Source: Octopus bimaculoides
Taxonomy: Eukaryota
Assembly (NCBI RefSeq): GCF_001194135.2
Contig: NC_068998.1
Coordinates: forward strand, 49,242,651 to 49,291,113
Reading direction: 5' to 3'
DNA length: 48,463 bases
Shown here piece by piece: positions 244-42,500 of the stretch. Numbering within the stretch: position 1 is the first letter of the stretch; each line of letters begins with the position of its first letter. The notes under the pieces were generated by a model. That model did not search any database. It saw only the letters and a program-made list of their open reading frames with translations, and was not told the DNA's origin. Made by a program: the position numbers and the translations under genes.

Positions 244-1565
244 AACTTTCGACGAATTTATGAACTGCTTCAAGAGATATGCGCTTGTTTGCTTAGATCA
301 TTATAAATTAATACATTTCAAGAGATGCCCGGTAAGTAGCTTTCATTCTCTTCCTTATATTTCCAGTAAAAATGAGCGACTGAGAAATTAACGATTCAAA
401 CAGTTTTGTTTTATTTAAAACATCTAAACAATCATTAATTTTCCTTACTTCACTATTGAAGGAAGAATCGAGAGAAGAAAGCGCAAATTATATTTAGTTA
501 CGATTTTCTTTTCTTTCAATTGAATACTAAATAATGGGGCATAGTAGGTACCGCGATGAAATAAACGTAATGAACCTGAAAATCTATATTGTTTTGTTTG
601 TGAGATTTCTAATCGATTGTAGCATTACGCCTTCTATATTCAGTAGAGGATAATTTTTGACATGGGAATATGACTGAAAATCTATTATTGGCTTTTCACA
701 ATAATTCAACATATTTTACAGAGTACTCATCCGCCAGAGACGGATTTGTGCAATATAGTTGGAGTAAGCAAAACATTTCTATTGCCGCCGAGTCTTCAAT
801 ATATGACAACGATTTCGATGTCAATTCACTGCAATACCCTCGCAACATTCATGTTTTAAACACCGCTCTGTATTTGTTATTACTAACATAGCATGGTAAA
901 CCATTTCAATATGGCTACAATAACGGTAACATAGGCATAAAATATAATGCAAAGCCTCCGGAACGCAAATGGGCATATTATAACGTCCTAAATAAAATAG
1001 AAGTGTTCACAGTAAAATAAACGCGTGAGCTATGTACTAAATATTCCTTGTTTGGGAATGTTAAAAGATGGTTTCAATGTAAGGGCAGTTTTAGCAAATT
1101 TCATTAAGAAACCGCGTAGTCACAATAACATACAATTTCACATTAAGCATAGGAATTAGAATTATGAGAATGAGCTGATTGTTTCATAAGACGAATGTGC
1201 TAGAGTTATCCGTCCAGGTATATTTTGAATATATTTTAATAGTGTACATATGTATAATCTTCATAAAACATATGATATAATATTTATGGCGTTACATGCC
1301 GGTCGCAAATAAAATGATGTGTATGCTTGATTAATATATTCTGTGTCTATATAATCGAAAAACAAAAGCATAGGCCATTCGAAAATTAATGGAAGTAATA
1401 TGAATAGCAGAGTAAAACGTCTCACAAGTAAAACGGTCCCCTAATTCACATTATATTATTGTTTTTTTTTTGTTAAATTTCGAATAACGAATCTTTTTTT
1501 CTATTTACAGCAGCCAGCCAGTATTCGGAGCTGCTATTGTAACTCTATTACTCACACATACATAA
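244..1565 (+). CDS. Paralog A (5'-partial, exons 3-5) of a 6-Cys putative GPI-anchored small protein family
   Basis: Exon 3 244-331 (ttccag|...|gtaagt) = TFDEFMNCFKRYALVCLDHYKLIHFKRCP. Exon 4 722-763 (ttacag|...|gtaagc) = STHPPETDLCNIVG. Exon 5 in the family frame from the AG at 1516-1517: 1518-1565 = PVFGAAIVTLLLTHT*. The first AG (1509-1510) gives QPASIRSCYCNSITHTYIIIYVFIMAL* (1511-1594). Exons 1-2 lie upstream of the window. Confidence 0.8.
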
Positions 1566-2194
1566 TAATTTATGTATTTATTATGGCTCTATAAATACGT
1601 TTGTGTCGTAATAACAAGATTCTAATATTACAAGAGGTCGACTTCACTGCAGATGTCTACAATTTCATACGTGACATTGAGGATATCTAATAATGTACTA
1701 CATTGTATGCTTTAAATATAGATTAAAATATCTTTCTATTTCAACGACTTTTACTGCGTCAGTTTTTGTAATTTTCAAATTGTTTTAAATTCAATATTCC
1801 AAGTATTCACTCGGATGAAAATGGTGCCATACAAGCAGAATCAATAATTGTAAGAAAGGAAGAAATTGTTTTACGTTTCACTGTAAGCCTGAAATTGAGC
1901 ATCAATTAAGATTTAGCATTATGGATCGTGAAGCATAACTTAATAGAAATACTACAATAAGTAGGCCCACACGAGATACTATGACATATATTTTCGAAAT
2001 AAAATCTCTTACGACAATGCATACATTTGAGTGCGAGTCATTAAACGGCACGGTCAGGGATTGGAAAGTATTTGGAAAATAATTCTTCATATATAAAGAT
2101 GTGATACAGTTCTATATTTAAGAGATGAGGAATTATTTACATTATTTACATTATCTACATTTGACGGATATTCGTCCTCATCTTGTTTGTTGTT

Positions 2195-2240
2195 AACACA
2201 ACGTTTCGGCTGATATACCCTCCAGCCTTCGTCAGGTGTC
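2195..2240 (-). ncRNA. Minimal type I hammerhead ribozyme motif
   Basis: Reverse complement reads GACAC-CUGACGA-A-GGCUG(10-nt loop)CAGCC-GAAAC-GUU-GUGUU: helix I 5 bp, helix II 5 bp, palindromic ACGU helix III. Confidence 0.72.
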
Positions 2241-2294
2241 AGGTGTCTTAGTAACATCGATAGGAATGAGAACCCAGGTTCGAAATTTCCCCAA

Positions 2295-2340
2295 GACACC
2301 TGACGAAGGCTGGAGGGTATATCAGCCGAAACGTTGTGTT
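2295..2340 (+). ncRNA. Minimal type I hammerhead ribozyme motif
   Basis: GACAC-CUGACGA-A-GGCUG gagggtatat CAGCC-GAAAC-GUU^GUGUU. Confidence 0.72.
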
Positions 2341-2972
2341 AACAACAAACAAGATGAGGACGAATATCCGTCAAATGTAAATAATGTAAATAATGTAAAG
2401 ATGTGATGTATTCTAATTTTAGAGTAGTATTTAAAGAATGTGGACAAGCATAACTGTGATGAAAGCAATACCATCTTCCATTAGTATTGCTATATCTCAT
2501 GTGGTGATAAAGAGTATAGCTGTCGGAATATCTCAATTAAAATTTGAGTACTCCTTATTTAGATTTGTAATTGTAACTTTCGGGTAATTTAAATATTATG
2601 GGTATAAATTATATAATATGTGTGTGTGCTCACATCTACAACACAGAATATATGACCATTATCCATGAATATAATGCACGTTTTACATTTTATTTCGTTC
2701 TAAATGGCGTGTTTTTAGGTGAGGAAAAGGAGCTAGCTAGAAAGGTATGTTATGTATAATACTTGAAGCAAAATAATGAACGGAAATAAACATTATTTAA
2801 CATTTTCAATTAATGCAAATCCTTGGAAGTACGAAGATTTACGACGTTATCTCAGAAGGAATAGAAAAGATATAGACAAAAAAAGTTAATCCGTGCTGTA
2901 CTGGCGTGGATTTAATAAAATGTTTATCCCTCCAACCGAAATTGCTTGCCTTGTGACAAAATTTGAAACCAT

Positions 2973-3381
2973 TACTCTTTTACTATTTTAATTGTTTCAG
3001 TCATTTGACTACGGCCATGCTTGTGCACCGCCTTTAGTCGAGCAAATCGACCCAGGACTTACTCTTTGGAAGCCTAGTACTTATTCTATCGGTCTCTTTT
3101 GTCGAACCGCTAAGTTACGGAGACGTAAACACACCAGCATCGGTTGTCAAGCGATGTTGGGTGGGGGGACAAACACAAACACCCACACACATGTACATAC
3201 ATTTACATACATATATATACGGCAGGGTTCTTTCAGTTTCCGTCTACCAAATCCACTCACAAGGTTTTGGTCGGCCCGAGGCTATAGTAGAAGACACTTG
3301 CCCAAGGTACCACGCAATGGGACTGAACCCGGAACTATGTGGTTGGTAAGCAAGCTACTTACCACACAGCACTCCTACGCC
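2973..3381 (-). mobile_element. tRNA-derived SINE
   Basis: Pol III A/B box-like head (GTGCTGTGTGGTAAG...GGTTCAGTCCC on the minus strand) and an internal microsatellite. The body matches the copy at 22745-23058. Confidence 0.75.
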
Positions 3382-3392
3382 TATAATGTGGG

Positions 3393-3512
3393 ATGCTTAC
3401 AGCACCTAGGTTTCCCAAGCGGTCACCCATCTAAGTACTCACTAGATTCGACGTTGCATAACTTCGGTGATCGGACGAGAACCGGTGCTATCAGCGTGAT
3501 ATGGCCACAAAC
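3393..3512 (-). pseudogene. 5S rRNA pseudogene (full length, ~120 nt)
   Basis: Reverse complement GTTTGTGGCCATATCACGCTGATAGCACCGGTTCTCGTCCGATCACCGAAGTTATGCAACGTCGAATCTAGTGAGTACTTAGATGGGTGACCGCTTGGGAAACCTAGGTGCTGTAAGCAT matches the metazoan 5S consensus. It has several substitutions, a weakened helix I and no oligo-T terminator. Confidence 0.88.
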
Positions 3513-3979
3513 AAGATGCTTTAGATGCTTTATTTAAATGCTTTACATTTCTCCACGCCACCTAACATTTTCTAAAGTATAATAAAGTGTAACATAAATC
3601 GGTAATGCTTTCAGCGACGTTGAACGGTCAGAAATATATCACGTTCTTCCTTAATAAAATGGAGACATAAAGACCATTCAGACTGAACACATTGTACATG
3701 TAATACTAACTCCTTCAACGCTGTACTGGTACAAACATCTATCACATTTTTATGGAAATACTATTTCCTTGGTCACTCTACAGCAATAAAACTTGAATAT
3801 ATATCATGATATAACATGGCATAAATGAATTTTACAACCCTACCTCGTCACTTGTTGTATGATATCCTATATGATATTAAATTATCAAAGAAATACCATG
3901 TGTACCAAGAAGAGTTATACCGATAACTAAAAAGCAATAGGAAACATATAGATATAGAGGTAAGATACGTCGGCAGAAT

Positions 3980-4043
3980 TTGAAGAGTTCATCACGAAAT
4001 TACACGATGATATATGGCATATTCATTTTCCTTATCATTTCTA
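3980..4043 (+). pseudogene. Extra (relic or alternative) signal-peptide exon 1 upstream of paralog B
   Basis: Reads (TTG)KSSSRNYT-MIYGIFIFLIIS|gtaatt. It has the same 64-nt length and phase as the B and C exon 1, an intact second ATG at 4007, and homologous intron-1 sequence to ~4150. Confidence 0.7.
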
Positions 4044-4176
4044 GTAATTAGCTATATGATAATTTTAATTAATATCTATGAGCAGAATATAGAAACGATA
4101 TAAATGATGTGTTAATACGACTCATCTTTTTCTTACTCATTTTCTCTCATCAGGCATACACACATGCACACATACG

Positions 4177-4246
<70 letters not shown>

Positions 4247-5033
4247 GTAGTTCTATGCTGTCAACTTAATGTGACTGCTATTTTGCCCGAGGAAGCAGCA
4301 CCGCTTCCTGTCGGCCTTGACACATTTCCTGTGTCCTTATATTTACAAGGGGGAGACAAGCACCCCCCACCCAGCTAAGCCTGCATCCAGCGATATGTTT
4401 CTGAGTCTTTGCTCGTCATCAGTCTTGAATAGCAATAGCCTGCTAATTGGAAATGCCTGTCAAGCTCTTGTAAACATATAATAATTCCAGTGAAACACAT
4501 TCACAGATTGTTATATGTAATTCTTTCCGGTATCTCCCTGAGAAATGCAAAGCAAATGTGAAAAATTAAACGGTCTTGTGTAGCCAACGAGAAATCAGGA
4601 TCACTCCCATATTCCACCAGAGTGTTAATATTTATGCTAGAGGCTTATTGGAGGTGTTGAAGATAATGTTTAATCCCTGAATATATGAATTACGCACATT
4701 CTGAAAGAGACGAAATCACTCAAGGAGCAGGTGTATCTACCGAAATTGCTTACCTTTTCAGACAGCTTGAAACGAATATTCAGATGGCTTAAATTCTTCC
4801 ATTTCATCTCAATCTTCCTCACATACAATATGAAAAGTTGATGTATCCTGTGACTATGAATGGTGACAAAAATATACAATATTTTTTCTCAGTAAAATGG
4901 AGACCTGAAAAATCAATAAATTCAGACGGAACCCACTGTATATACAATATTGATTTCCTCCATTATGTACAGGTACATGTATTATGAAATAGCATGTCAT
5001 AGATCAAATTTACTAACCTTCTTCGTAAGTTGA

Positions 5034-5090
5034 AACACATGTTACATCTTTATATGAATTTATAAAAGAAACTGCATTGCGTAAGTCGCG
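5034..5090 (+). promoter_or_regulatory. Core promoter of paralog B (AACACATGTTAC motif + TATAAAA)
   Basis: Motif at 5034-5045 and TATA at 5061, ~35 nt before the ATG. The same layout recurs in all paralogs. Confidence 0.6.
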
Positions 5091-5095
5091 CGAAT

Positions 5096-5318
5096 ATGAA
5101 GACTTCATCACGGAATTACACAATGTTATATTCTATACTTATTTTCTTTCTCATTTCTCGTAAGTAGCATTAAGATAATTATTTCTGAATTTTCATTAAT
5201 ATTTGTGCGTCGAATATAAGTGATGTAGTAATAGAGTTAATCTGATTCATGTTTTTCTTACTGATATTCTCTCCCCATGCATACACACATGCATACATAT
5301 GTAAGCATTATATGCATG

Positions 5319-5355
<37 letters not shown>

Positions 5356-6650
5356 NNNNNNNNNNNNNNNNNNNNNNNNNNNNNNNNNNNNNNNNNNNNN
5401 NNNNNNNNNNNNNNNNNNNNNNNNNNNNNNNNNNNNNNNNNNNNNNNNNNNNNNNNNNNNNNNNNNNNNNNNNNNNNNNNNNNNNNNNNNNNNNNNNNNN
5501 NNNNNNNNNNNNNNNNNNNNNNNNNNNNNNNNNNNNNNNNNNNNNNNNNNNNNNNNNNNNNNNNNNNNNNNNNNNNNNNNNNNNNNNNNNNNNNNNNNNN
5601 NNNNNNNNNNNNNNNNNNNNNNNNNNNNNNNNNNNNNNNNNNNNNNNNNNNNNNNNNNNNNNNNNNNNNNNNNNNNNNNNNNNNNNNNNNNNNNNNNNNN
5701 NNNNNNNNNNNNNNNNNNNNNNNNNNNNNNNNNNNNNNNNNNNNNNNNNNNNNNNNNNNNNNNNNNNNNNNNNNNNNNNNNNNNNNNNNNNNNNNNNNNN
5801 NNNNNNNNNNNNNNNNNNNNNNNNNNNNNNNNNNNNNNNNNNNNNNNNNNNNNNNNNNNNNNNNNNNNNNNNNNNNNNNNNNNNNNNNNNNNNNNNNNNN
5901 NNNNNNNNNNNNNNNNNNNNNNNNNNNNNNNNNNNNNNNNNNNNNNNNNNNNNNNNNNNNNNNNNNNNNNNNNNNNNNNNNNNNNNNNNNNNNNNNNNNN
6001 NNNNNNNNNNNNNNNNNNNNNNNNNNNNNNNNNNNNNNNNNNNNNNNNNNNNAAATATTTTCAAGTTGATTATTCTTTGGATTTACATGTAGTCAACGCA
6101 AAGCAACTAAAATCTGAATATCAAGAAATATTTCTTTTGTTATTTGCATCATTTGCGTTTAATGTTTGCTCAAAATTCCTCAGCAGTTGCGAATTTCTTT
6201 TTTTTTATTACCGAAAACTATGGTTTGTAACATGTTTATAGAGCTGTATTTTGGCTCGAAAACCGGTAAAGAGGGGGATTATTCTAGTAACCCATTTCGT
6301 CCATTCCTCGAGTGTCCAATCCATGGTATCAACTCAGTCCTTTAAAGTACCCTGGTACTGAGCTGGGGCCTGATTTTGAGGGCAATGAACTGCATGCGTT
6401 CGTATGGTAGATCGTCTCTAAGTTGAAGTAAATATGCGAAGTCACAATACCATCGGTGAGGAATTGTTCAGTCGATCTTTTTCGTGAATACAAGTACCCT
6501 AATACAACACTTCCATATCTACGTATCTAGCTATCATCTATATGGGTGTCTATCTCACACTTCATGACTCTACGTATACATGCATATACACACCCATGCG
6601 AGCGCGTACACACGCACACACACATATACTGAAAGAGGGAGAGAGAATGA

Positions 6651-6701
<51 letters not shown>

Positions 6702-8116
6702 AGGACAGTCAATTACGCGGGTAGAAAAATTAGATATAGTAAATATAATATAATAGTTTGGCCATGAAGTTCGACGATTCCATCTTCGAATTAACTTCTC
6801 TGTATTAAAATATCAAATGTAAGAACTTCTTTACCTTGATGATGGGGTCACATCTTATGGTATCTTGATTGCATTCATTACGACATATATTGACCTGAAA
6901 TACATCTACCAGCATTAACATGTCACTAAGCCTCCAGATTTTCGTCTTATGCCACCAGTTTTCTCTTTAGATTGTACTCTGTGTTAATTGGATCTATGAA
7001 TAGAAATATGTATATATCTTTTCTCAAATTTTCATTGTTTGAAGGTCTCAATTTTTTGTTTGGTGTCAATTTTCATGTATACATATATATACATAATTTA
7101 TGTGTCATGCGCAAACATTACCAATCATAAACGTGATAAACAAAGGGAGGCTGTCGCCGAACACCATCACGTATCGGATTCAACAATCACAAATGTGATG
7201 AAGGAGGACGTTCGATATATGGCACGTGTACTGTGAAGTACAGCAAAGAGAATGGAAATTGTTTGATCCGTGACAAGGGGCAAAAGTCATAAGAGAAATC
7301 ACAGACTGTTATGTACAGCTCCGGATACACCCTGAGAGAAATGCACAATGAATGTGATAGATTCAACGGTCATGAATAACCAATGTCACGTCATCTCAAA
7401 TATTCCATCAGAGTCCTAATAATTATGCTGGCGTCTTCGTTGAGATGTTGAAGATGATATTGAATCCCTGGATGAATAAAGTAAGCTCATTCTCACAATG
7501 ACTCCCAGGGATATATGTAACGCCTAACAAGTGAAATTCAATCCAACACGATTTTACGTTTGAAGCATGTTGAATGGGAGACAAATCGACATTCTCACAA
7601 TTTCATAAATTTCTAACAAAATTCATCAAAAAACTAAATTCTATCTATTTTCATCGCCCTCACAATTCCCCGAAATCGAAAATCAAACAGCCATATTTAG
7701 AATGTGTATCATACGAATGCCTAACAAACACAAATGTGTGTTGTTTAACAAAAAAATTATTTTGCAATAACCATTTGATATTTTCAATCCAGACCACACA
7801 TTTTTTAGGTGTCAGCTCAGTGGGACAATTTTGCTTTGGCGAGGGAATGCGTGTGTGTCCTGCTCATTTTAAAGACCCTAGACATAAGTACGAATTCTGC
7901 AGGTATGTGTATTTACATATATATATATATATATATATANNNNNNNNNNNNNNNNNNNNNNNNNNNNNNNNNNNNNNNNNNNNNNNNNNNNNNNNNNNNN
8001 NNNNNNNNNNNNNNNNNNNNNNNNNNNNNNNNNNNNNNNNNNNNNNNNNNNNNNNNNNNNNNNNNNNNNNNNNNNNNNNNNNNNNNNNNNNNNNNNNNNN
8101 NNNNNNNNNNNNNNNN

Positions 8117-8174
<58 letters not shown>

Positions 8175-10174
8175 TTCTGCCCCCTCATTGGAGAAGATAC
8201 ATTACAAACTGTGTTAGGTAACTCTTAGGATGTTTAAGAAGCTCCGAAATGCTAATATCTGGATAATATTATATCTGACATAGATATTAATTGTTTTGTG
8301 TCGTTGTAGAACTACGTAGTTCAAAAGTGATTTGGGTTTTAATCATTGAATTGATTTTGGTCTCATCTGCTTATAACTCTGAGTTACTTGAAAGTGGAGT
8401 CTGATTAAAGTTTTAATTAAGATATAAATAATACAATAATGCCCGAATGTATAATTTCCATTCATAGTCTTACCTTGCAGAAACTTCGAGAACTTTAATA
8501 AGTGTTTCCAGAAGGGATCCGCAAAATGTATACGTGAGTACAAACGAAAACATTCTTACGTGTGTTTTGTAAATATCTTTCATTATCTTACTTATATTTT
8601 GCCTAAAATGAGAGACCGAGACAAAAATGATCTAAAACTAATCGTTGTATTGTAATAATATTAAAAAAAAAACATTAGATTTCCTAAAGTCACCCTTGAA
8701 GGAAAAGAAAAACAAAAAAACGAGCAAAGGATGAATATGTTATTTAGCTACTGTCATATTTTCTTTCAATCCAACTTTAAATAGCATGGTATACAATGTG
8801 CCGTGATAACATAAACGTAATGACGGTCATGGTTACAGTATCTTTGGTAGCCTCTGACTGTCTATTTTGTCTTAGATGCAAGATTTTTAATCGATGATAA
8901 TATTATCACTGCTATATGCAGTAGTGAAAGTTAATCTTTCACTTGGATATATGTCTGAAAATCTATTACTGGTTATGAAACGAAATTTTCACAAAAATTC
9001 AACCTATTTTTCAGACTCCTAAACCGTTGCCGAGCGCCTCGTGCGACATTGTTGGAGTAAGCAAAATATTTCTATTTCCGCTGTCTTCAATATATAATAA
9101 CCATACCGATTTGAAGTATATGTCTTTTTTTTTAATTCACTACAATTCTGTTGCAACATTTCTGCTGTTAACGTAGCTGTGTATTTGTTATAAGGGACAT
9201 AGCATTGTAAACCTTTTCAATAAGACTACAATAAAAATAACATCAGCATAAAACATAATGCAAAGCCTGCGGAACAAAACGGCATATTATAACGTCTCAA
9301 CTGAAATAGAAGTGTTCACAGTAAAAGAAATGCATTAGATATGAAATACATTCTCGATAATGGGGTGCTCGATTCATGATAGGGACACGCTAGATCTATT
9401 CCCGCAGGAAGATTTTGATTTTATTTTAATAACATACGCATAATCTTTATGATAAATATGATGTAATTTTGATGGCGTTACATAAACATTACAAATAAAA
9501 ATATTGCAATGTTTAATGACAATGCTGATTATTACGAGAAAGCATTGGAAAGGAAAGTTCTTAAGAATGGAGCTCTGTAGGTTCCTGTGACGGAACAAGA
9601 ATTTCATAGTAACAGGTCCGTTAATTCCCGTAGAAAAAGAAATAGTTGTAAGACACAGTATAGCCCGGTTATTCTACATCAGCAATTATCATCATCCGTG
9701 AGCGTACATTGGGTTTAACTTCCATAGTATTAAACTTACGTTAGATCACGAAATCTATAAAAGTACAGGATAAAGGCACTGTGTCGGATATATTCTATTC
9801 AGCGTACCTACCCCAAAACATCAATTTTAAGTTAATCAAAGGTATCTGCAATCATATTGCAAGTTTGAAGAACATAGCATAGACTGCGGTCTTATAAAAG
9901 AATCTACCTTAATAATGACATAAAACTATATGTGGACTGATTAATATATGTTGTGTCCATATCATTAATGAAAGCATAAGCCAAATGAAAATTAATGGAA
10001 GTGATAAGAGTAGCACAGTAAAAAGTCTTACCTAATTAACATTAAATGATAGTTGAAATAAATGTTGGAATAACGAATTTTTTCTTCCATTTACAGGTTA
10101 GGAGCGAGTCAGTATACGCAACTGCCGTTGTAACTCTATTACTCAACGTACATAAGTATTTATTATGTCACTGA
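5096..10174 (+). CDS. Paralog B, complete 5-exon gene, 121 aa signal-peptide, 6-Cys, putative GPI-anchored protein
   Basis: join(5096-5159,7809-7902,8481-8568,9015-9056,10097-10174). All introns GT-AG, phases 1,2,0,0. Protein: MKTSSRNYTMLYSILIFFLISRVSSVGQFCFGEGMRVCPAHFKDPRHKYEFCRNFENFNKCFQKGSAKCIREYKRKHSYVCFTPKPLPSASCDIVGVRSESVYATAVVTLLLNVHKYLLCH*. TATA box at 5061. Confidence 0.88.
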
Positions 10175-12302: not shown

Positions 12303-12515
12303 ATGAAATGTTCGTCTGGAAATTACACAATGATATATTCTATATTTATTTTCTTTCTCATTCCTCGTAAGTTTCTATATGATAATTTTTTCGGAATTTT
12401 CATTAATATATTTTTGTTGAATTTAGATACGCTATAAATGATGTAGTAATATAGTTAATCTGTCTCATCCTTTTCCTACTCATTATGTCTCCTCATACAT
12501 ACCTACATACATACA

Positions 12516-13205: not shown

Positions 13206-14060
13206 GGTAGAAAGAGATGGGGGAGAAGGAGAAGCAATGATGCAGATAAAGAAATTAGATATCTCAAATATAACATAATAGTTTGAGTATCAGCTAAATC
13301 CCTGAAATATAAAATCTCTTCCCTGATGATGAGGTACCGTCTAATACTATGTTGATTGCACCCCTTACGGCACATATTGAGATGAACAACACCAACCAGC
13401 ATTATCACGCATCTCCAAGCCTCCAGAAACAGATTTTGGGCTTATAATTTTCTCTTTCGTTTATACTGTGTAAGCCTGGTTAATCAATATAAATATCTTA
13501 TACTTGTTCTTAAATATTCATCGTCTGAAAGTCTCCATCTTTTACTTTCTCTCTATTTCCATGTATACATATATACATATCACGTGTTTCATGCGCAGTT
13601 ATGTACATATATATTAATACATGTAATATACATGTATACGCCAACCCTCACACATATGTGTGTGTGTCTGTGTGTGCGCGTGTTTCCGTGTTTGTGTACG
13701 TTGCTAACATTCAATCATACCGTAAAAGTGCAAATGAATTTCCCCTCTATGTTTCCATACATTACTTACAGTATTTTGAAATCCCCAGACATATCCAATC
13801 CCCGATCAGAATTATAATGAAATCTCATCATTGTACGCACAAATCCCCAGAATCGAACATTAAAATACCATATATATTCTCTGTGTCATATAATTGCGTA
13901 ATAAACAACATTCAATTCTGCAAAGGTCATTTCATAATTTCCTATAAATCTTAAATTTTTTTAGGTATCAATGCAATGACTGTGGATTGCATTAAAGAGG
14001 CAAAAAAGCATTGTCCTAGTTTTGTGCATCCTGATAAAACTGATGAATACTGCAGGTACG

Positions 14061-14093
<33 letters not shown>

Positions 14094-16253
14094 ATAATTT
14101 TATTGTTAGACTTTAACAAATAATTATACAATTATGTATTGTCAAATATTTGCTTTTATAAAACGTTTATCTTTATAGAAAGTCTAAATCTTTTTAGATG
14201 AATCCATAGCAATGAAAATAAATATTTCTTTTGACTATTATTCATAATAATGATTTCAATGACAGTAATGTCGATGGAGAGTGTACGTCGATTACATCGA
14301 CTCCATTACTCAACAGCTATTTTTTTGATCGACTCAAAGGGATGAAAAGTATAGAATTTTAACTCAGAATGCAAAGACAGACGAAATGTTGCTACGCATT
14401 CCGTCCGGCGTGATAGCGATTCTATCAGCTTGTTCTACATGTTCAATTATATAAAGACAACCGTGCAGACTTACGTTTATTTCTTTTTTTTCATTTCAAT
14501 TTTAAATCGTTTAATTTTGCTATAGTAGTTCAATTATATAAAGACAACCGTGCAGCCTGACGTTTATTTCCTTTTTTTCCATTTGTATTTTAAATTGTTT
14601 AATTTTGCTATCGTAGTTTATATATTTCTGAAAGGTTAATCTCTGGATAATATATCTGGGAATAGAGTTGATATAAAAATATAAATAAAACAGGAATACT
14701 TGCACGTTTAGAATTCATTCATATTTCTACTTTGCAGAACTTTCGGGGAATTTGAAAAATGCTTCAAAACACTTGATATATATTGCTTTGAACGGTTCCA
14801 AACCATACATTTTCATAATTGTTTGGTAAGTAGCTGGCATTGCATTCGAATTATTTGTCTTAAACAAAAAGTGACAGATCTGAACTATGTAAAAAAAAAC
14901 ACAAAGTTTTATTTTAAGAGTATAAACAATGAAATTGCCCTTGAAAGAACTAACGAGCAAGAAAAGAAAGAATATGTTATTTAGTTCCGTATTTTTTTTA
15001 TTTTCTTTCAATTCAATACTAAATAATATGGCGTAGTACGTACTGCGATAACGTAATCGTACCAAACGGTCGTAGTTGCAGTATTTCATAAATTCTCTAA
15101 TAATCTACTGTGTCATACTTGTAAGAGTTTTAATCAGTCGTAGTATTATGGTATCTATATTCGATATTGTTCGATGAATTCCATATAGGTATATGTCTGA
15201 AATGGCATTATAATTTTTCACAACAGTTGAACATTCTCTTTCAGACTGTACCGAAGAGGAACAGCTTCCGCAACACAGTTTCTACTGGTCCTGCGTCTTC
15301 AGTATGTGAATATAGCTATATCAATTTCAAGGATACGTCTTTTAATTCGCTTTCATATCATTTAAACATTTCTGTGATAAACGCAACTGTTTTTTTTTTC
15401 TGTTGTTATCAGTGAGATAGTATGGTAACCTATTTCATTATCGCTACAAAAACAGTAACATAAGCATAAATTATACTGCAAAGCCTGTACGATGTACAAA
15501 GATATATTTTCTGTAGATACATTGTAATGTATCTAATATCTAATTACAACAGTCGAATTTGTAATATATACGAATATATACCATATATACGTTTCAATGT
15601 GAATTATAGGGTTTTTAGTAACGAGAGTGTGTCGTTGTACTACAATTTGTAGACAAGTTATCTAAAATCCTGTTGTAATTACAATAATATCATTGTTAGT
15701 TGAAACTACGTTATACATAGATGGTTTGAAAGTTGAGCTAGTTTTTGATGGAGTTTCTCTATAAGCCTCCACTGAAGTCTAATGCTGGCTCCGTACCGTT
15801 TACATAATGCAGTTCTATATTTTAGAGATGAGGAATTATGTACATTATTTACATTTGACGGACATTTGTTCTCATCTTGTTTGCTCTTAAATATAGAACT
15901 GGACTTTATAAGTTAATGAAAATTAGTCTCTAAGCATAACTTATATGGTTAAAAATATAACAGACTACGATTTGATGAGGTATCTTAATGTATCTACAAC
16001 AATTACTCGATACATGAGAATATATGATATATCATTAATATATGATATATTCACAACACCCTAGAGGTCATAGGCCACGTGAATAATAATGGAAGTTCTA
16101 GGAGTATAATTGCTTACCTAATTCGCATTAAATGTTTGTCGGCATAAAACTTTGAATAACCAACATTTCTTCCATTTGCAGCCAGCCAGTATTCACAACA
16201 GCCACTTACTATTCGCAACTGTTGTTGTAATTCTGTTACTCACACATACATAA
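12303..16253 (+). CDS. Paralog C, complete 5-exon gene, ~123 aa
   Basis: join(12303-12366,13965-14055,14738-14825,15245-15301,16182-16253). Protein: MKCSSGNYTMIYSIFIFFLIPRINAMTVDCIKEAKKHCPSFVHPDKTDEYCRTFGEFEKCFKTLDIYCFERFQTIHFHNCLTVPKRNSFRNTVSTGPASSPASIHNSHLLFATVVVILLLTHT*. The exon-4 donor used here is the non-ancestral GTATGT at 15302. Confidence 0.85.
13133..13203. repeat. (GA)n microsatellite (homologous tract at 6652-6696 in intron 1 of B)
   Basis: Direct reading; the flanks are homologous between B and C. Confidence 0.9.
14280..14430 (-). mobile_element. Diverged SINE fragment
   Basis: gtcgattacatcgact...gacagacgaaatgttgctacgcattccgtccggcg matches the same family in reverse. Confidence 0.55.
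14441..14616. repeat. ~87-bp tandem duplication in intron 2 of paralog C
   Basis: gttcaattatataaagacaaccgtgcag...aattttgctat occurs twice. Confidence 0.85.
15810..15901. mobile_element. Collapsed remnant of the same Penelope-type terminal repeat, in intron 4 of paralog C
   Basis: Matches 2108-2190. Ends CAGTTCTATATTT...AAATATAGAACTG form a 13-bp inverted repeat; the hammerhead part is deleted. Confidence 0.6.
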
Positions 16254-18942: not shown

Positions 18943-19131
18943 ATGAAATATTCCATAATCATTTTCCTTCTTATTTTCCGTAAGTAGCTATATGATAATT
19001 ATCTCTGAATTTTTAATATTGTTTGTGTGCAGAATATTAATATGATATAAGTGACATTGTAATATATCCATTCTGTCTCATCGTTTTCTTTCTCACTCTC
19101 TGTGCTTATACATACACACATGCATAGACAC

Positions 19132-22860: not shown

Positions 22861-22904
<44 letters not shown>

Positions 22905-25726
22905 CAGACTTCTTTCAGTTTCCGTCCACGAGATCCACTCACAAGGCTTTGGTCGGCCCGAGGCTATAGTATAAGGCACTTGCACAAGGTGCCACGCAGT
23001 GGAACTGAACCCGAGACCATGCGGTTGGTAAGGAAGCTACTTATCACACAGCCTCTCGTACAGCTTTTGAATTGAAAATTGTTTCATTTTTCTATCGTCG
23101 TTTCAAGATCTCCGAAGTTCTAATCCCATGGCTATATTATATTTAACAGTGAGAGTAGACTTTCTGTTTTGTGGTAACAAGCTGAGAAATGATTTTAAGG
23201 AAAAATATTACGACTTGATTTTGGTTTATTAATCTTATAAACATCGGCCACTCGCAAGGCTATTTTCATTAGGATATAATATTATGAACAATACACGAAT
23301 ATCTGAATGTATAATTTTCAAGCCTGTTTTTACACTGCAGTAACTACAAACTTTTCCTCGAATGCTACGAGAGATACAAAAAGGAAGACACTGAGTGTTT
23401 GGATCGTTTCGACTTCTTACATTTTCATAAGTGTCAGGTAAATAGCTGGTATTACTTTAAGCTTATAAACCTAAAACAATGAGTGAGTGAATATATGGCC
23501 GGTATTATTTTGTTACTTTAATTTATTTTCCCTGCCCCATTAAATTAAATAGAAACAAACGATTTAATTTTTTTTTTTTGTAAGAATATAAGCAATCAAT
23601 ATTTTTCCGAGAAGCCCCTTCGAAGAGACAATCGAGCAAGGAAGGATAGAGTATATTATTTAGGGGTGTGTTTATTTTTTTTTCAATTTAATACTATATG
23701 ATGTGGCCTAGAAACTGCCGCGACGGCACGGTGGCAGTATTTTCTTTGATAGTCTCTGACAGTCCATAGTTTATTACTTGTATGCATTTTAGTCAATCGT
23801 TGTTGCTGTTGTTGACACTCCGTCGCTTACGACGTCGAAAGTTCTAATTCATCCGATCAACGGAACAGCCTGCTCGTGAAATTAACGTGCAAGTGGCTGA
23901 GCACTCCACAGACACGTGTACACTTAACGTAGCTCTCGGGGATATTCAGCGTGACACAGTGTGACAAAGCTGACCCTTTGAATTACAGACACAACAGAAA
24001 CAGGAAGTAAGAGTGAGAGAAAGCTGTGGTGAAAGATTACAGCAGGGTTCTCCACCATCCCCTGCCGGAGCCTCTTGGAGCTTTAGGTGTTTTCGCTCAA
24101 TAAACACTGCCAACGCCCGGTCTGGGAATCGAAACCGCGATCCTATGACCGCGAGTCCGTTGCCCTAACCACTGGGCCATTGCGCCTCCACTTAGTCAAT
24201 CCTATATAATCAGTATATAACGAGGTATTTCACATGGAGGTATGTCTCAATATTTATCATAAGTTTCGAAACAAACTTTTCACAACAATTTAACATTTTC
24301 TTTCAGATAAAGCAAAATTCCGGCAACACAGTTCGAGTAAGCAATACGATTCTAGTGCCGCTGACTCTTCAATATCTGTCTACAACAATATCAGTTTGAA
24401 GGATATGTTTCTTTAATTCTCCCTAATGCCGTTGGAACATCTCTGTAGTAAACGCAGTTGTGTTTTTGTCATCAATGAATAAGTGTTGTGAACATTTCCA
24501 GTAACTGTAACATGACCAGAAGACTGCAAAGGCACCCCGACAGAAGAATATTTTGTTCAGTAATATGACAACCTAATTTCATTGATAATCGGTTACAGTG
24601 GACCGAATTAAAATTTTGATATGCTTATATGATAAAATGTCTGATTAAGCTGATAATATAACGTAATAATTGAAATATTAGAACAGTGTATATTCAAATA
24701 GATGTGTTAGATACATAGTATATATTCAATACTCGTTGCAATCTAAACTCGACGCTACTGTGTTAAGTAATTGTTTCGATGTAAGAGATGTTCTAGACAA
24801 AGGTACTTAGAAAGTGGCGCAATTACTTTCAAATTATTACAAGGTTAACATACGTTATTCGTATAATATCGCAGTATGCAACTGGATTATGAGAGGGCAT
24901 GGTGCTAGTGTCCAATTACAGATACAGTAGCATTAGTCTCTGCATCAATATTTTCAATGTATTTTAATAATATATATAACAATATAATAAGAAGTATGAT
25001 ATTATTGTGATGGCGCTACATTGCGGTTAATAATAAAATTGTTACCGAAGTAATATTCATTGCTAATATGAATATTAAGAGAAAGTACCCGAAGAGAAAG
25101 GTTTGAAGAATAAGATTAGATACATTCATCCGAATGAACAACGGTCTCATAGCAGCAGTCCATAATTCCCATAGAAAGATAAATAATAGTAAGAAACTTT
25201 ATATCTGAGTTACTGTAAAACGAATAATTAGTAATGTCCTCGATCGTAAATTAAACCTACATACACTGTACTAAAACTAGAGCTACGCCAGTCCTTAAAA
25301 ACATAAGTACATTAATATAGACAGAAAATTTGTAAAACTATTAAATCAGATATTGGACCTATCAAAGCAAACTCTACTTCGAAAATAAAGATATATCAGG
25401 GCATGACTAATATGCCTAACAAATATATTTAATACTAAAATCTGATGTATGAATCGAATTTAATATACCCGTTATATAAAAAAAACAATATATTTAGGTT
25501 TTACCAATATATATTATAAACACAATAGACTAGAAAACATAGGCCAACTGAATATCAATGAAAATACTGAAAGTAAAAAATGTAAAATAGCTCACGTGAT
25601 TCACATTTTATGTTGGTCGATATAAACATTCGATTAACCAAAGTTTTCTTCTATTTACAGGTGAAGAGCCAAACAATCTTCGTTACTGCGTTTTCAATTC
25701 AGTTATTCATCTATATGTATAAATAA
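18943..25726 (+). CDS. Paralog D (exon 2 not visible, probably in gap 21484-22424)
   Basis: Exon 1 18943-18979 = [12 protein letters not shown](R)|gtaagt. Exon 3 23341-23437 = [32 protein letters not shown]|gtaaat. Exon 4 24307-24336 = [10 protein letters not shown]|gtaagc. Exon 5 25661-25726 = [27 protein letters not shown] at 25722. Confidence 0.8.
19780..20130 (+). mobile_element. CR1/L2-like LINE ORF2 linker fragment
   Basis: [14 protein letters not shown]...SPLID...[16 protein letters not shown] resembles the KxNPKxFYSY...EMAxxLNxxF region between endonuclease and RT. Confidence 0.6.
20485..20723 (+). mobile_element. SINE (core TTCAAATTCCGCCGAGGTCGACTTT family)
   Basis: Core shared with 25951-26120, 11820-11970 and 16917-17040; A-rich 3' end. 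Confidence 0.7.
20940..21370. repeat. Compound (TA)/(TG)/(CA) microsatellite field
   Basis: Direct reading. Confidence 0.9.
22745..23058 (-). mobile_element. tRNA-derived SINE (same family as 2973-3381)
   Basis: Near-identical blocks acgtaaacacaccagcatcggttgtcaagcgatg and ttctttcagtttccgtc...ggtcggcccgaggctatagt. Confidence 0.75.
23799..24191 (-). mobile_element. Full-length tRNA-derived SINE with 10-bp TSD, in intron 3 of paralog D
   Basis: tRNA-like head, (CAA)n-like tail, TSD TTAGTCAATC at 23789-23798 and 24192-24201. Homologous to 44150-44530. Confidence 0.85.
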
Positions 25727-29524: not shown

Positions 29525-35845
<6,321 letters not shown>

Positions 35846-39500: not shown

Positions 39501-42500
39501 ATGAAATATTCTGCATATATCTTGCTTCACATATTTGGTATGTAGACATATGACAAATATTCTCCATTTTTTTTCTTCCTACTTGTTAATGTAATATATA
39601 TATATAAATATGTGTGATATAGTTGTCTATCTGTTTTGTCAATACTTTATGTTTGTCAATGGCATTTAAGGAGAAGGGGAAGTTGTGGTGTGTGAAATGT
39701 GTAACTTGCTTTGTTAACTGGGTTTTTTCCCCGTTACTCAACCCCCGCTTGTAACGCTTCCACATGATTAGTTGAAGAGAAATGGGAAGAAAACAAAAAG
39801 GACAGAAATAATTGGGTAAAGCGAAGAATGAGAGAGAAACAGGGATATTTTTTGTATTAGGTTTATAAGATTGTGCATAAAGTGTATAAAGTGTATAACG
39901 TGTATAAAGTGCATAAAGTGTATAAAGTGTATATCTTAAGTATATTGATTAATCATCGCATTCGAATTGCTTTCACTTGTCAATGATTAGCAAATGCGCG
40001 AATATCTTTTGATGTAGACGCAACACAGGTTATGTATTCCGGTTCTTGGGGTAAAGTTTTCAGAAATAGCACAATAACTTTACCATTAATTCTATGAAAT
40101 ATTCAGGGGCTCCGCTAATTTTCCTTTTTTTATTTCTACACTCAGTTACGGTATCCTAACGTCTTCGAAAGTATTTGTCCCAGAGCATTTGATGACACTT
40201 GAAATGTATTTTATGTAAATGCTCAGGGGAAAAGACACCACATACAGTGATTTTGAGATGGCTATAATAAGATACTGTGAATGAGTATATATTCTGATTC
40301 TTAAAAATCCATTTCAACTTGTACTGTTGTTTTAATAATTCAAATTGTGATTATTTATTAAGCATACAGCGAGTCACGCTGTATAAGTCTTTACAGGAGT
40401 TAAAGTTTATGGTACCTGTATGCTGTCTTATCCCGATGTGATTACGAGATGTTCGAAGAGATGTAGATACTACATTGTTTCACCTCATTCAGTTATATAG
40501 CACAGCTGCTTCACATTTAGGTACTTGTAGGTGTCGAGGAAAATCTGATTATAAACGTCTTTTCGTATAATTTAATCATACTTTTGCTTCGAATATTTGA
40601 AAATGAGAAAAAGTTTATCGCAAGTAACATAAATGATTTTTTTTTGAATATCAGAAAAAAATGTATTACACACACGTGCACACACATACACACATACACA
40701 CACACACAGACTTATATGTATTTACGACACGTATGTAATAGATATACCAACAGAGATAATTCAGTTCTTGTTCCGTAGGTTAATAGAGCAACGAATATTC
40801 TTAATCTATTTTCGAATATTATTGACATCTCAGAATTATCTACATTTGACCATTATCTTACCAAACCCAGAGAATCAACACCCTCATCCAATCTATTTTT
40901 ATACTCAATAATTCTAGTAACTAAGAGAACTGGCGGTAAAATTAGCATGTCGTAAATTGTAATACTTTAATTAATATCAAGGGCTTGCCCACAGGAATCT
41001 AAGCACATATACTACAATATCAAGGTATGTATATTATAATATATTTAACATATATAATAAATATAAAAGCAAAGCTAATCTAGCTATTTCTCTGTAGATT
41101 GGGAAAACGTTGACCAGCTTTAATCGGTTTTCGTAACTTATTGAGTTCTCATCAAAGTTGTCTACATGTATGCAGGTACGTATGTATGTATACATGTATG
41201 TATGCATTCATGCATGTACGTATGTATGTACGCAAGCATGTATATATGTATCTATATAATTACCGGCAAAAAATAAAGTTTTTCCCGAACACTAATTTTG
41301 GACAGCAGCTTTATATTCTGAGGTACACTTGTTATCACTGTATACATGCTTGTTGTGTAAGTGGAAGAAGACACTTGGGTTATTTTAAATATTATTGAGA
41401 ATATCAAGTCTTCAAACTAAACATTGAGATATAATATAATATAATATAATCATTGAGGTATAATATTACCGCTTCTGTGGTAAGCTACTTTCCGAATACA
41501 ATTGTGGCTTCCATTCTCTCTTTCCATCGAAATTCGCTGCTAATATAATTAGTCTCAAAATCAAACTACTCTATCTAGATTAAAACTTAGATATAGCATG
41601 TGAGCACGTTATGTACACACTCTTCAATTTATATGTTTAAATGAGTTGATTTGTAATTTGCAAAGACAATAAGAAGTAGCACATGTAGTAGTTTTTGTCT
41701 AAGATCATTGTGGGGCTCCGTGTATTTCTTACAAAAAATATACGTCTGAGTTTCCTTTCCAAGATTTATCATATCTAAAAAAAGTATTTTTTTCATTAGA
41801 TCATTCTATTTAATGTAGCTGCAATTTCATTGTAAACTGTGACTTTACCATTTAGTATAACTTACTACTCTACCACTTCTTGAGATTTTATAACTAACTA
41901 TTTTGGTTGTTGGAAATCAGTCACTGACTGCCACTTCGTTTAGAATATATCGGTGGCAGAAGCGGATCTTAGCTATCAATCCATCGCGTAGGTGCGCTTG
42001 GCTGATGTGAGCCAAATAGCTCGAAACTGGACGGTAATATATATATATATATATANNNNNNNNNNNNNNNNNNNNNNNNNNNNNNNNNNNNNNNNNNNNN
42101 NNNNNNNNNNNNNNNNNNNNNNNNNNNNNNNNNNNNNNNNNNNNNNNNNNNNNNNNNNNNNNNNNNNNNNNNNNNNNNNNNNNNNNNNNNNNNNNNNNNN
42201 NNNNNNNNNNNNNNNNNNNNNNNNNNNNNNNNNNNNNNNNNNNNNNNNNNNNNNNNNNNNNNNNNNNNNNNNNNNNNNNNNNNNNNNNNNNNNNNNNNNN
42301 NNNNNNNNNNNNNNNNNNNNNNNNNNNNNNNNNNNNNNNNNNNNNNNNNNNNNNNNNNNNNNNNNNNNNNNNNNNNNNNNNNNNNNNNNNNNNNNNNNNN
42401 NNNNNNNNNNNNNNNNNNNNNNNNNNNNNNNNNNNNNNNNNNNNNNNNNNNNNNNNNNNNNNNNNNNNNNNNNNNNNNNNNNNNNNNNNNNNNNNNNNNN

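What the first reader, a model, noticed from the sequence alone, without database searches (positions are those of the whole stretch)
244..9326. Mature-domain exons diverge much faster than adjacent introns (conotoxin-like accelerated evolution)
Hand counts. Exon 3 of A (244-331) versus B (8481-8568) is 44/88 nt identical (50%) and 9/29 aa identical. An intron-4 segment of the same two genes (886-1017 versus 9197-9326) differs at only about 20 of ~130 positions (~85%). Signal exon 1 of B versus C is 54/64 nt identical (34/37 from the second ATG), while their exon 2 shares little beyond the Cys, Pro and flanking residues. Conserved signal and introns with hypervariable inter-Cys residues is the established signature of diversifying selection in cone-snail and snake toxin genes and in recognition proteins. 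Gene conversion restricted to introns is an alternative explanation.
Basis: partly seen in the sequence, partly recalled or inferred. Interest (0 to 1): 0.8.

Follow-up and report, generated by a model that had tools for sequence, protein, structure and literature searches.

The report
Fast-diverging exons in octopus gene array
Six tandem copies of an uncharacterised Octopus bimaculoides gene for a small cysteine-locked surface protein have domain-coding exons that differ more than the surrounding introns, which resembles venom-toxin gene evolution, but the standard test for positive selection (dN/dS above 1) is not passed.

Summary
The 85% intron block is a local peak, though. Whole A/B introns are about 70% identical, against 50% for exon 3.

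The window is Octopus bimaculoides chromosome CM046618.1, about 49.24-49.29 Mb. It holds six + strand units (A-F) of a five-exon family seen only in this species' annotation. Each gene encodes a signal peptide, a roughly 55-residue predicted three-helix domain with six invariant cysteines, a linker and a hydrophobic, GPI-signal-like tail. Only gene C has a RefSeq protein.

Closer paralogs just upstream (U6, U7) make the contrast clearer. Non-coding DNA is uniformly about 80% identical, and identity drops to 52-62% exactly at the exon 3 borders. Nonsynonymous divergence is 0.32-0.41 per site. Non-coding divergence is 0.18-0.27 (P = 0.004 to 4e-10).

Cys codons are not position-specific. Gene conversion does occur in the array, but it does not explain dips confined to exons.

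Verdict: exon-limited accelerated divergence is real. Diversifying selection is the likeliest cause but is unproven. This is a new member of a known kind.

The parts
244..331 (+). Gene A exon 3 (second half of the Cys domain, 3 Cys). A's exons 1-2 lie upstream of the window.
   Evidence: AG/GT borders and translation TFDEFMNCFKRYALVCLDHYKLIHFKRCP; nhmmer exon-3 profile hit.
722..763 (+). Gene A exon 4 (linker, STHPPETDLCNIVG).
764..860 (+). Conserved start of A intron 4. It reads through in frame as VSKTFLLPPSLQYMTT..., an alternative C-terminal tail used by RefSeq isoforms of sister genes.
   Evidence: 81-89% identity among U6, U7, A and B; P0008 and P0006 end in the homologous read-through peptide.
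886..1017 (+). It is a local identity peak (87% to B 9197-9326).
1518..1565 (+). Gene A exon 5 (hydrophobic tail PVFGAAIVTLLLTHT*). The acceptor at 1517/1518 keeps the family frame. The acceptor at 1510/1511 would shift it.
3969..4065 (+). Extra exon-1 copy upstream of gene B. The first ATG is lost, the second ATG is intact and the donor is gtaatt. It is either an alternative first exon or a relic.
   Evidence: nhmmer E = 3e-17; sequence; units U3 and U6 also carry two exon-1 copies, and RefSeq isoforms use both in U3.
5096..5159 (+). Gene B exon 1 (signal peptide; family start ATG at 5123, upstream in-frame ATG at 5096).
5356..6052 (.). Assembly gap inside intron 1 of gene B.
   Evidence: flanks collinear with unit C.
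7809..7902 (+). Gene B exon 2 (first half of the Cys domain, 3 Cys).
7940..8116 (.). Assembly gap inside intron 2 of gene B, between (TA)n and (AC)n.
8481..8568 (+). Gene B exon 3.
9015..9056 (+). Gene B exon 4.
10097..10174 (+). Gene B exon 5 (tail and stop).
12303..12366 (+). Gene C exon 1. C is RefSeq XP_052830199.1 (LOC128249755), which starts at 12303.
   Evidence: P0001 is identical to my spliced model.
13965..14055 (+). Gene C exon 2.
14738..14825 (+). Gene C exon 3.
15245..15301 (+). Gene C exon 4 (extended to a downstream donor).
   Evidence: confirmed by P0001.
16182..16253 (+). Gene C exon 5.
18943..18979 (+). Gene D exon 1. D's exon 2 was not found and probably lies in gap 21484-22424.
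23341..23437 (+). Gene D exon 3 (97 nt, three extra codons).
24307..24336 (+). Gene D exon 4.
25661..25726 (+). Gene D exon 5.
29525..29561 (+). Gene E exon 1.
32702..32792 (+). Gene E exon 2.
33637..33724 (+). Gene E exon 3.
33883..33927 (+). Gene E exon 4. Its donor is AT, not GT, so the read-through tail is probably used, as in U2 and U3.
35792..35845 (+). Gene E exon 5.
39501..39537 (+). Gene F exon 1. F's exon 2 was not found; gap 42056-42805 is the likely location.
43740..43827 (+). Gene F exon 3.
44645..44689 (+). Gene F exon 4.
45076..45135 (+). Gene F exon 5.

Best explanation
What it is. The window is part of a tandem array at least 130 kb long on Octopus bimaculoides chromosome CM046618.1. 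The array carries an uncharacterised five-exon gene family. Each gene encodes a surface protein of about 100 aa:
- exon 1 encodes the signal peptide;
- exons 2 and 3 encode a roughly 55-residue predicted three-helix domain held by six invariant cysteines;
- exon 4 encodes a short linker with small residues, the probable GPI attachment site;
- exon 5, or read-through of the exon-4 donor, encodes a short hydrophobic C-terminal tail.

How it evolves. Units arise by tandem duplication and are occasionally homogenised in part by gene conversion or unequal exchange. After duplication, the domain exons 2-3 and the linker part of exon 4 accumulate substitutions about 2-3 times faster than the surrounding non-coding DNA. 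The signal and tail exons stay as conserved as the introns, or more so.

Most likely cause. I think the most likely cause is diversifying selection on the exposed surface of the helical domain, that is, a recognition or ligand-binding protein under pressure to differ between paralogs. An unexplained moderate excess of synonymous change (about 2-fold) accompanies it, as in the classic venom-gene cases.

Shown: the gene structures; the family and its species restriction in the databases searched; the exon-bounded divergence; dN above non-coding divergence; the conversion tracts.

Inferred: selection as the driver, the GPI anchoring, and any function.
For: Gene models:
- Canonical splice sites and intact reading frames for B, C and E.
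- The C model is identical to XP_052830199.1.

Family:
- A profile search of 1.84 billion representative proteins found 24 hits, all O. bimaculoides. Twenty-three are on the same 55.56-Mb chromosome record.
- All six Cys positions are conserved across the 26-sequence alignment: five columns are invariant and the sixth is nearly so (the one exception is a short isoform, P0022). Mean column identity is 24%.
- The AlphaFold model has a core with pLDDT about 90, three helices, a disordered linker and a C-terminal hydrophobic helix.

Exon versus non-coding divergence:
- A/B: exon 3 is 50% identical and exon 4 is 60%, against flanks of 70-81%.
- U6, U7 and A: exon 3 is 52-62% identical, against about 80% for non-coding DNA. 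Exon 3 is lower than every 88-nt non-coding window.
- U6/U7: exon 2 is 61% identical, against flanks of 84% and 79%.
- Identity collapses at the exon borders at base level.
- Non-coding divergence is homogeneous on both sides of the exon (U6/U7 chi-square P = 0.70; U7/A P = 0.12). This argues against a patchwork of intron conversions.
- Nearest neighbours agree between the exon-3 and intron-3 matrices. This argues for a shared history with faster exons.

Selection tests:
- pN is 0.32-0.41 and non-coding p is 0.18-0.27, Fisher P = 0.004 to 4e-10.
- Exon 4 of U2/U3 has dN 0.37 and dS 0.14, and sits inside a block that is about 95% identical.
- GC and CpG content of exons and introns are similar, so composition does not explain the rate difference.

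Conserved parts: signal exon 34/37 (B/C) and 36/37 (U2/U3); tail exon 81-85%.
Against: - dN/dS is not above 1. ML estimates are 0.38 (U2/U3, significantly below 1), 0.40, 0.44, 0.84 and 1.35 (not significant).
- Third codon positions are the most diverged (A/B 19/29).
- Synonymous changes at codons with unchanged amino acids run about 2 times the non-coding expectation (19 observed against 9.1 expected in three independent pairs). Amino-acid-level selection alone does not explain that.
- In U2/U3, exon 3 is no more diverged than its immediate flanks. In U4/U5 there is no synonymous excess.
- For the more distant pairs in the window, exon and intron are equally saturated.
- The exons are tiny (29-32 codons), so every estimate is noisy.
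- No orthologs, polymorphism data or expression data were available.
- Five of the six window genes have no RefSeq protein. E has a non-GT exon-4 donor, and exon 2 of D and F is missing from the assembly.
Confidence: 0.5

Rival explanations
1. The exons are old and the non-coding DNA has been rejuvenated. The paralogs are ancient (dS 0.5-1.5). Repeated gene conversion or unequal crossing-over homogenises the introns, spacers, signal exon and tail exon. The domain exons escape, either because converted variants are selected against or because their divergence blocks heteroduplex formation.
For: - Synonymous and third-position divergence in exons 2-3 is 2-4 times the non-coding divergence.
- Conversion-like tracts are visible. 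U6/U7 are 97-100% identical over more than 800 columns, from mid intron 4 through exon 5. U2/U3 jump from about 83% to about 95% inside intron 3.
- A/B non-coding identity is heterogeneous.
- B/C is a mosaic: the exon 1 region is 70-92% identical, and no blastn match exists over 7114-8722.
Against: - The flanks on both sides of exon 3 have the same, statistically homogeneous divergence in U6/U7 and U7/A.
- The drop coincides with the exon borders to within a few bases in several lineages. This would need paired tracts of equal age ending at each exon edge.
- Almost the whole A unit, including the spacer, aligns to B, rather than patches on an unalignable background.
- The observed tracts do not respect exon borders and include exon 5.
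- This model still requires selection for exon diversity.
Confidence: 0.2
2. A mutational process is focused on the exons. This could be locally elevated or clustered mutation, as was proposed for conopeptide genes, or repeated short patch conversions from distant paralogs into the domain exons. No adaptive drive is needed.
For: - All three codon positions are accelerated.
- Replaced codons differ at about 2 of 3 positions in A/B (39 differences in 20 codons, my count from the sequences).
- The synonymous excess at conserved residues.
- pN is about equal to pS in U6/U7.
Against: - No mechanism is known that targets exons of 88-97 bp while sparing exons 1 and 5 of the same transcript.
- Exon and intron composition are similar.
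- No donor-like exon appears among the 13 units or the 24 database proteins.
- The Cys and aromatic scaffold is retained, so selection is clearly acting.
Confidence: 0.12
3. Constraint is relaxed and the yardstick is constrained. The domain exons evolve nearly neutrally apart from the cysteines, and several copies may be pseudogenes. The introns and UTRs are slowed by function: the alternative read-through coding sequence, splicing signals for micro-exons, and regulatory elements.
For: - Omega is about 0.4-1.35.
- Only C has a RefSeq protein.
- U4 has lost two cysteines.
- The first roughly 100 nt of intron 4 are coding in some isoforms.
- The same non-coding blocks (end of intron 3, start of intron 4, upstream of exon 5) are the best conserved in many pairs.
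Against: - Exon 3 is below even the least conserved non-coding window in U6/U7/A.
- The non-coding divergence there is Poisson-like rather than patchy.
- It would take uniform constraint of about 50% over more than 1 kb of intron.
- B, C and E keep intact reading frames, splice sites and all six cysteines.
Confidence: 0.13
4. Assembly artefact. Short-read assembly of a tandem array could have produced chimeric units or copied sequence. The array has 11 gaps in 48 kb.
For: - Many N gaps next to microsatellites.
- The perfect U6/U7 tract could be a copy error.
Against: - The exon-bounded pattern recurs in independent unit pairs at 50-85% identity, which is too divergent for collapse.
- The C model matches RefSeq exactly.
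Confidence: 0.03

Closest known systems
Accelerated evolution of snake-venom PLA2 and other venom isoform genes (Ogawa 1992 and Nakashima 1993, as summarised in PMC7285919)
   Same: [quoted passage not shown]
- The signal-peptide region is spared.
- Substitutions accumulate at similar rates at all three codon positions.
- The genes are multicopy paralogs.
Here, A/B codon positions differ at 13, 12 and 19 of 29 sites, and non-coding DNA is 70-80% identical against 50-62% for the exons.
   Different: - In the venom genes KA is reported as close to or larger than KS. Here omega is mostly 0.4-0.8, with a maximum of 1.35 that is not significant.
- There is no evidence that this octopus family is a venom component.
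- The fold, the likely membrane anchoring and the five-micro-exon structure are unrelated.
Conopeptide genes, and mussel MgCRP-I cysteine-rich peptides (PMC4558851)
   Same: - Molluscan, lineage-restricted, multicopy families.
- Conserved signal, hypervariable mature region and six invariant cysteines.
- The functional modules lie on separate exons.
   Different: - MgCRP-I shows significant positively selected sites and site-specific Cys-codon preservation (PMC4558851). Here TGT and TGC alternate freely at each Cys position, and no significant omega above 1 was found.
- There is no propeptide or dibasic cleavage site here.
- The product here is larger, predicted helical, and ends in a hydrophobic anchor-type tail rather than being a free peptide.
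Intron homogenisation with exon diversity maintained by selection, as described for MHC genes (from memory, not checked here)
   Same: Non-coding DNA looks younger than the adjacent variable exons at synonymous sites too. Recombination or conversion is demonstrably active in the array.
   Different: That case concerns alleles under balancing selection. Here the sequences are tandem paralogs, and the flank divergence is homogeneous, which fits poorly.
Small GPI-anchored Cys-rich surface proteins (Ly6/uPAR family)
   Same: Signal peptide, a compact disulfide-rich ectodomain of 55-70 residues, a short linker with small residues and a C-terminal hydrophobic tail. Tandem clusters and rapid divergence.
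   Different: Six cysteines rather than 8-10. The fold is predicted to be all-helical, not a three-finger beta fold. No Pfam hit. Not a member.

Membership tests
Venom/conotoxin-type accelerated evolution (as an evolutionary mode) | Signal-peptide exon conserved relative to the mature region | tested here: met
   B/C 34/37; U2/U3 36/37; mature exons 50-85%.
Venom/conotoxin-type accelerated evolution (as an evolutionary mode) | Hypervariable mature region on an invariant cysteine framework | tested here: met
   All six Cys positions conserved (five columns invariant, one nearly so); mean column identity 24% in 26 sequences.
Venom/conotoxin-type accelerated evolution (as an evolutionary mode) | Introns and flanks more conserved than the mature-region exons | tested here: met
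   Met for U6/U7/A/B and for A/B in the window. Not seen in saturated pairs.
Venom/conotoxin-type accelerated evolution (as an evolutionary mode) | dN/dS at or above 1 in the mature region | tested here: inconclusive
   ML omega values are 0.38, 0.40, 0.44, 0.84 and 1.35. Only U2/U3 differs from 1, and it is below 1. Exon 4 of U2/U3 gives 2.6, on 17 codons. dS is partly saturated.
Venom/conotoxin-type accelerated evolution (as an evolutionary mode) | Position-specific conservation of Cys codons | tested here: not met
   TGT and TGC are mixed at every Cys position across 13 units.
Venom/conotoxin-type accelerated evolution (as an evolutionary mode) | Expression in a venom or secretory gland, or toxic activity | not testable with these tools
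   No expression data are available, and no similarity to any known toxin family was found.
Ly6/uPAR (three-finger) domain | 8-10 cysteines in the LU pattern and a beta-rich three-finger fold | tested here: not met
   Six cysteines, predicted three helices, no Pfam match at E <= 10.
GPI-anchored protein | N-terminal signal peptide plus a C-terminal signal: a small-residue omega site, a spacer and a terminal hydrophobic stretch of 10-20 residues with no cytoplasmic tail | not testable with these tools
   The sequence is consistent with this by eye (for example ...NGSVNIVGVEIQPVFVTAIGTLLLV*). The hydrophobic run of about 11-12 residues is too short for a transmembrane helix. No GPI predictor or assay was available.
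RAMP (receptor activity-modifying protein) | Three-helix, three-disulfide ectodomain, a transmembrane helix and a cytoplasmic tail, with detectable fold or sequence similarity | tested here: not met
   The top Foldseek hit was RAMP1, but with E = 3 and TM 0.18. It was not recovered with the core-only model. The profile search against PDB sequences gave 0 hits at E <= 10.
Concerted evolution by gene conversion | Tracts of near-identity with abrupt borders between paralogs that are otherwise diverged | tested here: met
   U6/U7 are 97-100% identical over more than 800 columns, against about 81% elsewhere. U2/U3 step from about 83% to about 95% inside intron 3. Between window units there is no tract above 90%. 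An assembly artefact is not excluded.

The most novel reading that the evidence does not exclude
This is an octopus-lineage family of membrane-anchored three-helix proteins, with more than 20 genes, whose domain exons are diversified by an exon-targeted process. Selection would act together with locally elevated or clustered mutation or patch conversion. The result would be a repertoire of variable surface-recognition molecules, for example for self/non-self, neuronal or chemotactile recognition, built on a fold with no detectable relative.
Probability: 0.12. Interest if true: 0.8.

Novelty: new member of a known kind. Interest (0 to 1): 0.5.

Why it matters
Cephalopod genomes are known for lineage-specific gene expansions whose functions are mostly unknown. 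This family has at least 24 annotated proteins on essentially one chromosome region. It has no Pfam domain, no PDB relative and no hit outside O. bimaculoides in a search of 1.84 billion proteins.

It shows the same puzzling signature as venom and immune effector genes. Exons outrun introns even at synonymous sites. In this array the contrast can be resolved cleanly, because non-coding flanks with homogeneous divergence provide an internal clock next to exons of 88-97 bp.

If orthologs and population data confirm selection, the array would be a compact system for separating selection, conversion and mutation bias in hypervariable gene families. It would also point to an uncharacterised class of octopus cell-surface proteins.

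Tried and rejected
- Pfam scan of B, C and E: no family at E <= 10.
- Word-indexed protein searches: nothing for B, only 5 family members for the 26-sequence profile, and only itself for P0005.
- Foldseek against PDB with the full-length model and with the core-only model: nothing significant. The RAMP1 lead was not reproducible. The core-only AlphaFold model was poorer (pLDDT 70) than the full-length one.
- Profile search against PDB sequences: 0 hits.
- Search for exon 2 of D and F by pattern and by nhmmer: not found.
- Global MAFFT of A/B intron 4 misaligned its 3' part because of a roughly 450-bp indel. I used local blastn blocks instead.
- Composition (GC, CpG) as a cause of faster exon change: rejected.
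- Literature searches for the family: nothing found.
- NG86 dS was often incalculable because of saturation. I therefore added a pairwise ML codon model and a count of synonymous changes restricted to codons with unchanged amino acids.
- codeml site models (M7/M8) were not attempted. Paralog dS is saturated and no orthologs were available.

Full report
**Observation.**
- Exon 3 of A (244-331) versus B (8481-8568) is 44/88 nt and 9/29 aa identical.
- The intron block 886-1017 versus 9197-9326 has 113 matches, 17 mismatches and 2 gap columns.
- Exon 1 of B versus C is 54/64 identical, and 34/37 from the second ATG.
- Exon 2 of B versus C is 47/91.

The 85% block is a local maximum. Whole A/B intron 3 is 71.5% identical at aligned positions, intron 4 is 69%, the upstream flank 67% and the 3' flank 77%. 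blastn gives 67.6% over 145-1042. Exon 3 is still the trough of the A/B profile. Only 3.8% of 88-nt non-coding windows are as diverged. Alignments of shuffled introns give about 45% identity.

**Gaps.** Gap 5356-6052 lies in intron 1 of gene B and gap 7940-8116 in intron 2. Both are bounded by microsatellites. No exon or compared segment crosses them. The flanks are collinear with the gap-free unit C and with A. The spliced B reading frame is intact. Exon 2 of D and F could not be found and probably sits in gaps 21484-22424 and 42056-42805.

**What is there.** Profile scans find exactly six copies each of exons 3, 4 and 5, six copies of exon 1 (one of them an extra copy at 3969-4065), and three copies of exon 2, all on the + strand. 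The five-exon model has canonical splice sites. My spliced model of gene C is identical to RefSeq XP_052830199.1, "uncharacterized protein LOC128249755" of Octopus bimaculoides. This places the window at about 49,242,651-49,291,113 of CM046618.1.

The encoded protein has these parts:
- a signal peptide;
- a domain with the pattern C-x7-C-x13-16-C-x8-C-x7-10-C-x11-C;
- a linker;
- a short hydrophobic tail.

An AlphaFold model gives a confident core (pLDDT about 90) of three helices, a disordered linker and a terminal hydrophobic helix. There is no Pfam family, no PDB sequence relative and no significant fold match.

An exhaustive profile search of 1.84 billion representative proteins found 24 relatives. 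All are O. bimaculoides "uncharacterized" proteins, and 23 are on this chromosome. Genes A, B, D, E and F have no protein record. Absence from other species is not proven, because relatives above 50% identity are hidden behind the representatives and small micro-exon genes are easily missed by annotation.

Some isoforms, and the genes whose exon-4 donor is AT instead of GT (E, U2, U3), read through exon 4 into "intron 4". This gives an alternative tail (...VG[VI]S[KT].FLLPLSLQYMTT...) and explains why the first roughly 100 nt of that intron are conserved.

**Extending the test.** I fetched neighbouring loci of the same chromosome and annotated seven further units, U1-U7. By intron-3 identity the units form young clusters. 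Exon-3 identity for the same pairs is lower:

| Cluster | Intron 3 identity | Exon 3 identity |
|---|---|---|
| U2, U3 | 90% | 85% |
| U4, U5 | 82% | 74% |
| U6, U7, A | 77-81% | 52-62% |
| B versus that trio | 67-71% | 47-52% |

Nearest neighbours are the same in both matrices. For U6/U7, U7/A and U6/A, exon 3 is less conserved than every one of the 88-nt non-coding windows. Exon 2 of U6/U7 is 61% identical, against flanks of 84% and 79%. The base-level alignment shows identity collapsing at the exon borders. The flanking non-coding divergence is statistically homogeneous for U6/U7 (P = 0.70) and U7/A (P = 0.12), but heterogeneous for A/B. Within the window, the more distant pairs (A/C, B/C, C/D, and those involving E or F) show no contrast, because exons and introns are both near saturation.

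**Selection tests.**
- Nonsynonymous differences per site are 0.32-0.41. Non-coding differences per site are 0.18-0.27 (Fisher P = 0.004 to 4e-10). With equal mutation rates this indicates change faster than neutral.
- Synonymous sites are at least as diverged. A/B differences by codon position are 13, 12 and 19 of 29. NG86 pS exceeds pN in every exon-3 pair among the six window genes.
- A pairwise ML codon model gives omega of 0.38 (U2/U3), 0.40 (U7/A), 0.44 (A/B), 0.84 (U6/A) and 1.35 (U6/U7). None is significantly above 1.
- Counting only synonymous changes in codons whose amino acid is unchanged, the observed numbers are about twice those predicted from non-coding rates. They are 8 against 3.5, 6 against 2.9 and 5 against 2.6 in three independent pairs, and 6 against 2.2 for U7/A. 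U4/U5 goes the other way, 1 against 4.0.
- GC and CpG content do not differ enough to explain this. Cys codons are not position-specific.
- The linker exon 4 of U2/U3 has dN 0.37 and dS 0.14 (omega 2.6, on 17 codons only) and is embedded in sequence that is about 95% identical.

**Gene conversion.** U6 and U7 are 97-100% identical from mid intron 4 through exon 5 and beyond, over more than 800 columns, against about 81% elsewhere. U2/U3 step from about 83% to about 95% identity inside intron 3. B/C is a mosaic. Conversion or partial duplication is therefore active, unless these tracts are assembly copies. The tracts include an exon, and their borders do not track exon edges. To produce the exon-3 dips they would have to end on both sides of the exon at the same age in several lineages.

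**Interpretation.** The best reading (confidence 0.5) is accelerated divergence limited to the exons of the helical ectodomain. Diversifying selection on a membrane-anchored recognition or ligand-binding protein is the likely driver, within a birth-and-death array that is occasionally homogenised.

The rivals are:
- old exons with rejuvenated non-coding DNA (0.2);
- relaxed constraint measured against a constrained yardstick (0.13);
- a mutational or patch-conversion process focused on the exons (0.12);
- assembly artefact (0.03).

[quoted passage not shown] It also resembles the molluscan MgCRP-I and conopeptide families (PMC4558851). It differs from those in lacking omega at or above 1, site-specific Cys codons and a propeptide, and there is no evidence of toxin function. 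It is not a Ly6/uPAR or RAMP member. GPI anchoring is inferred from the sequence only.

**Verdict.** The finding is a new member of a known evolutionary kind, in an uncharacterised family so far seen only in octopus. Interest is 0.5.

Noticed in passing
window 3394-3512 (- strand); 3105-3370; 22744-23052: A full-length 5S rRNA match (94 bits, E = 3e-19) sits directly next to a roughly 270-nt repeat. The repeat recurs at 22744-23052 (74.5% identity) in intron 2 of gene D. This may be a 5S-derived SINE rather than a true 5S gene.
   Followed up: partly
window 2136-2240 / 2295-2399; related copies at 15807-15890, 34392-34515 and 34862-35033: A near-perfect palindrome with 105-nt arms (99% complementary) and a 54-nt loop. 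Related copies elsewhere in the window are 82-93% identical. It looks like a MITE or foldback element.
   Followed up: partly
window 23810-24191 and 44150-44531: A 382-nt repeat (90.8% identical) lies in intron 3 of gene D and in intron 3 of gene F, in opposite orientations. These look like independent insertions of one element into the same intron of two paralogs. They account for the long intron 3 of those genes (869 and 817 nt, against about 400).
   Followed up: no
window 28898-29027 and 30676-30805: 130-nt inverted repeats (95% identical), about 1.65 kb apart, bracket exon 1 of gene E (29525-29561).
   Followed up: no
window 3969-4065; L001 18335-18371 and 19353-19389; L003 about 17648 and about 20127: Several units carry two copies of the signal-peptide exon. 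RefSeq isoforms of LOC128249826 use either copy, so the extra copy upstream of gene B may be an alternative first exon rather than a relic.
   Followed up: partly
window 33928-33929 (gene E); L001 15777 and 21519 (U2, U3): The exon-4 donor is AT instead of GT in three genes. Annotated isoforms read through into intron 4 and end in a different hydrophobic tail. The family therefore appears to have two alternative C-termini.
   Followed up: partly
window 1504-1520 (gene A exon 5 acceptor): A has a run of acceptors (cag cag ccag ccag) and a roughly 20-nt deletion relative to C. Only the acceptor at 1517/1518 keeps the conserved tail frame. The first acceptor gives a frameshifted tail.
   Followed up: no
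window 5096, 12303 and about 18910: B and C have an upstream in-frame ATG that adds 9 residues (MKTSSRNYT, MKCSSGNYT), and RefSeq uses it for C. In D the equivalent reading frame hits a stop after 4 codons. In E and F it is absent. The conserved start is therefore the second ATG.
   Followed up: partly
L001 27502-27589 (unit U4): Exon 3 of U4 has lost two of the three cysteines (Cys to Tyr and Cys to Arg) and no exon 2 was found, so it is probably a pseudogene. Its sister U5 is intact.
   Followed up: no
L003 about 24700-25591 versus about 33400-34311 (U6, U7): More than 800 columns are 97-100% identical between adjacent units whose exon 3 is only 55% identical. This is either a very recent conversion or a partial duplication, or a copy error in the assembly.
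   Followed up: partly
window 11040-11150 and 14441-14618: A roughly 15-nt tandem repeat (CTTCTTTGCTTCCTT) lies in the B-C spacer. A roughly 90-nt direct duplication (91% identical) lies in intron 2 of gene C.
   Followed up: no
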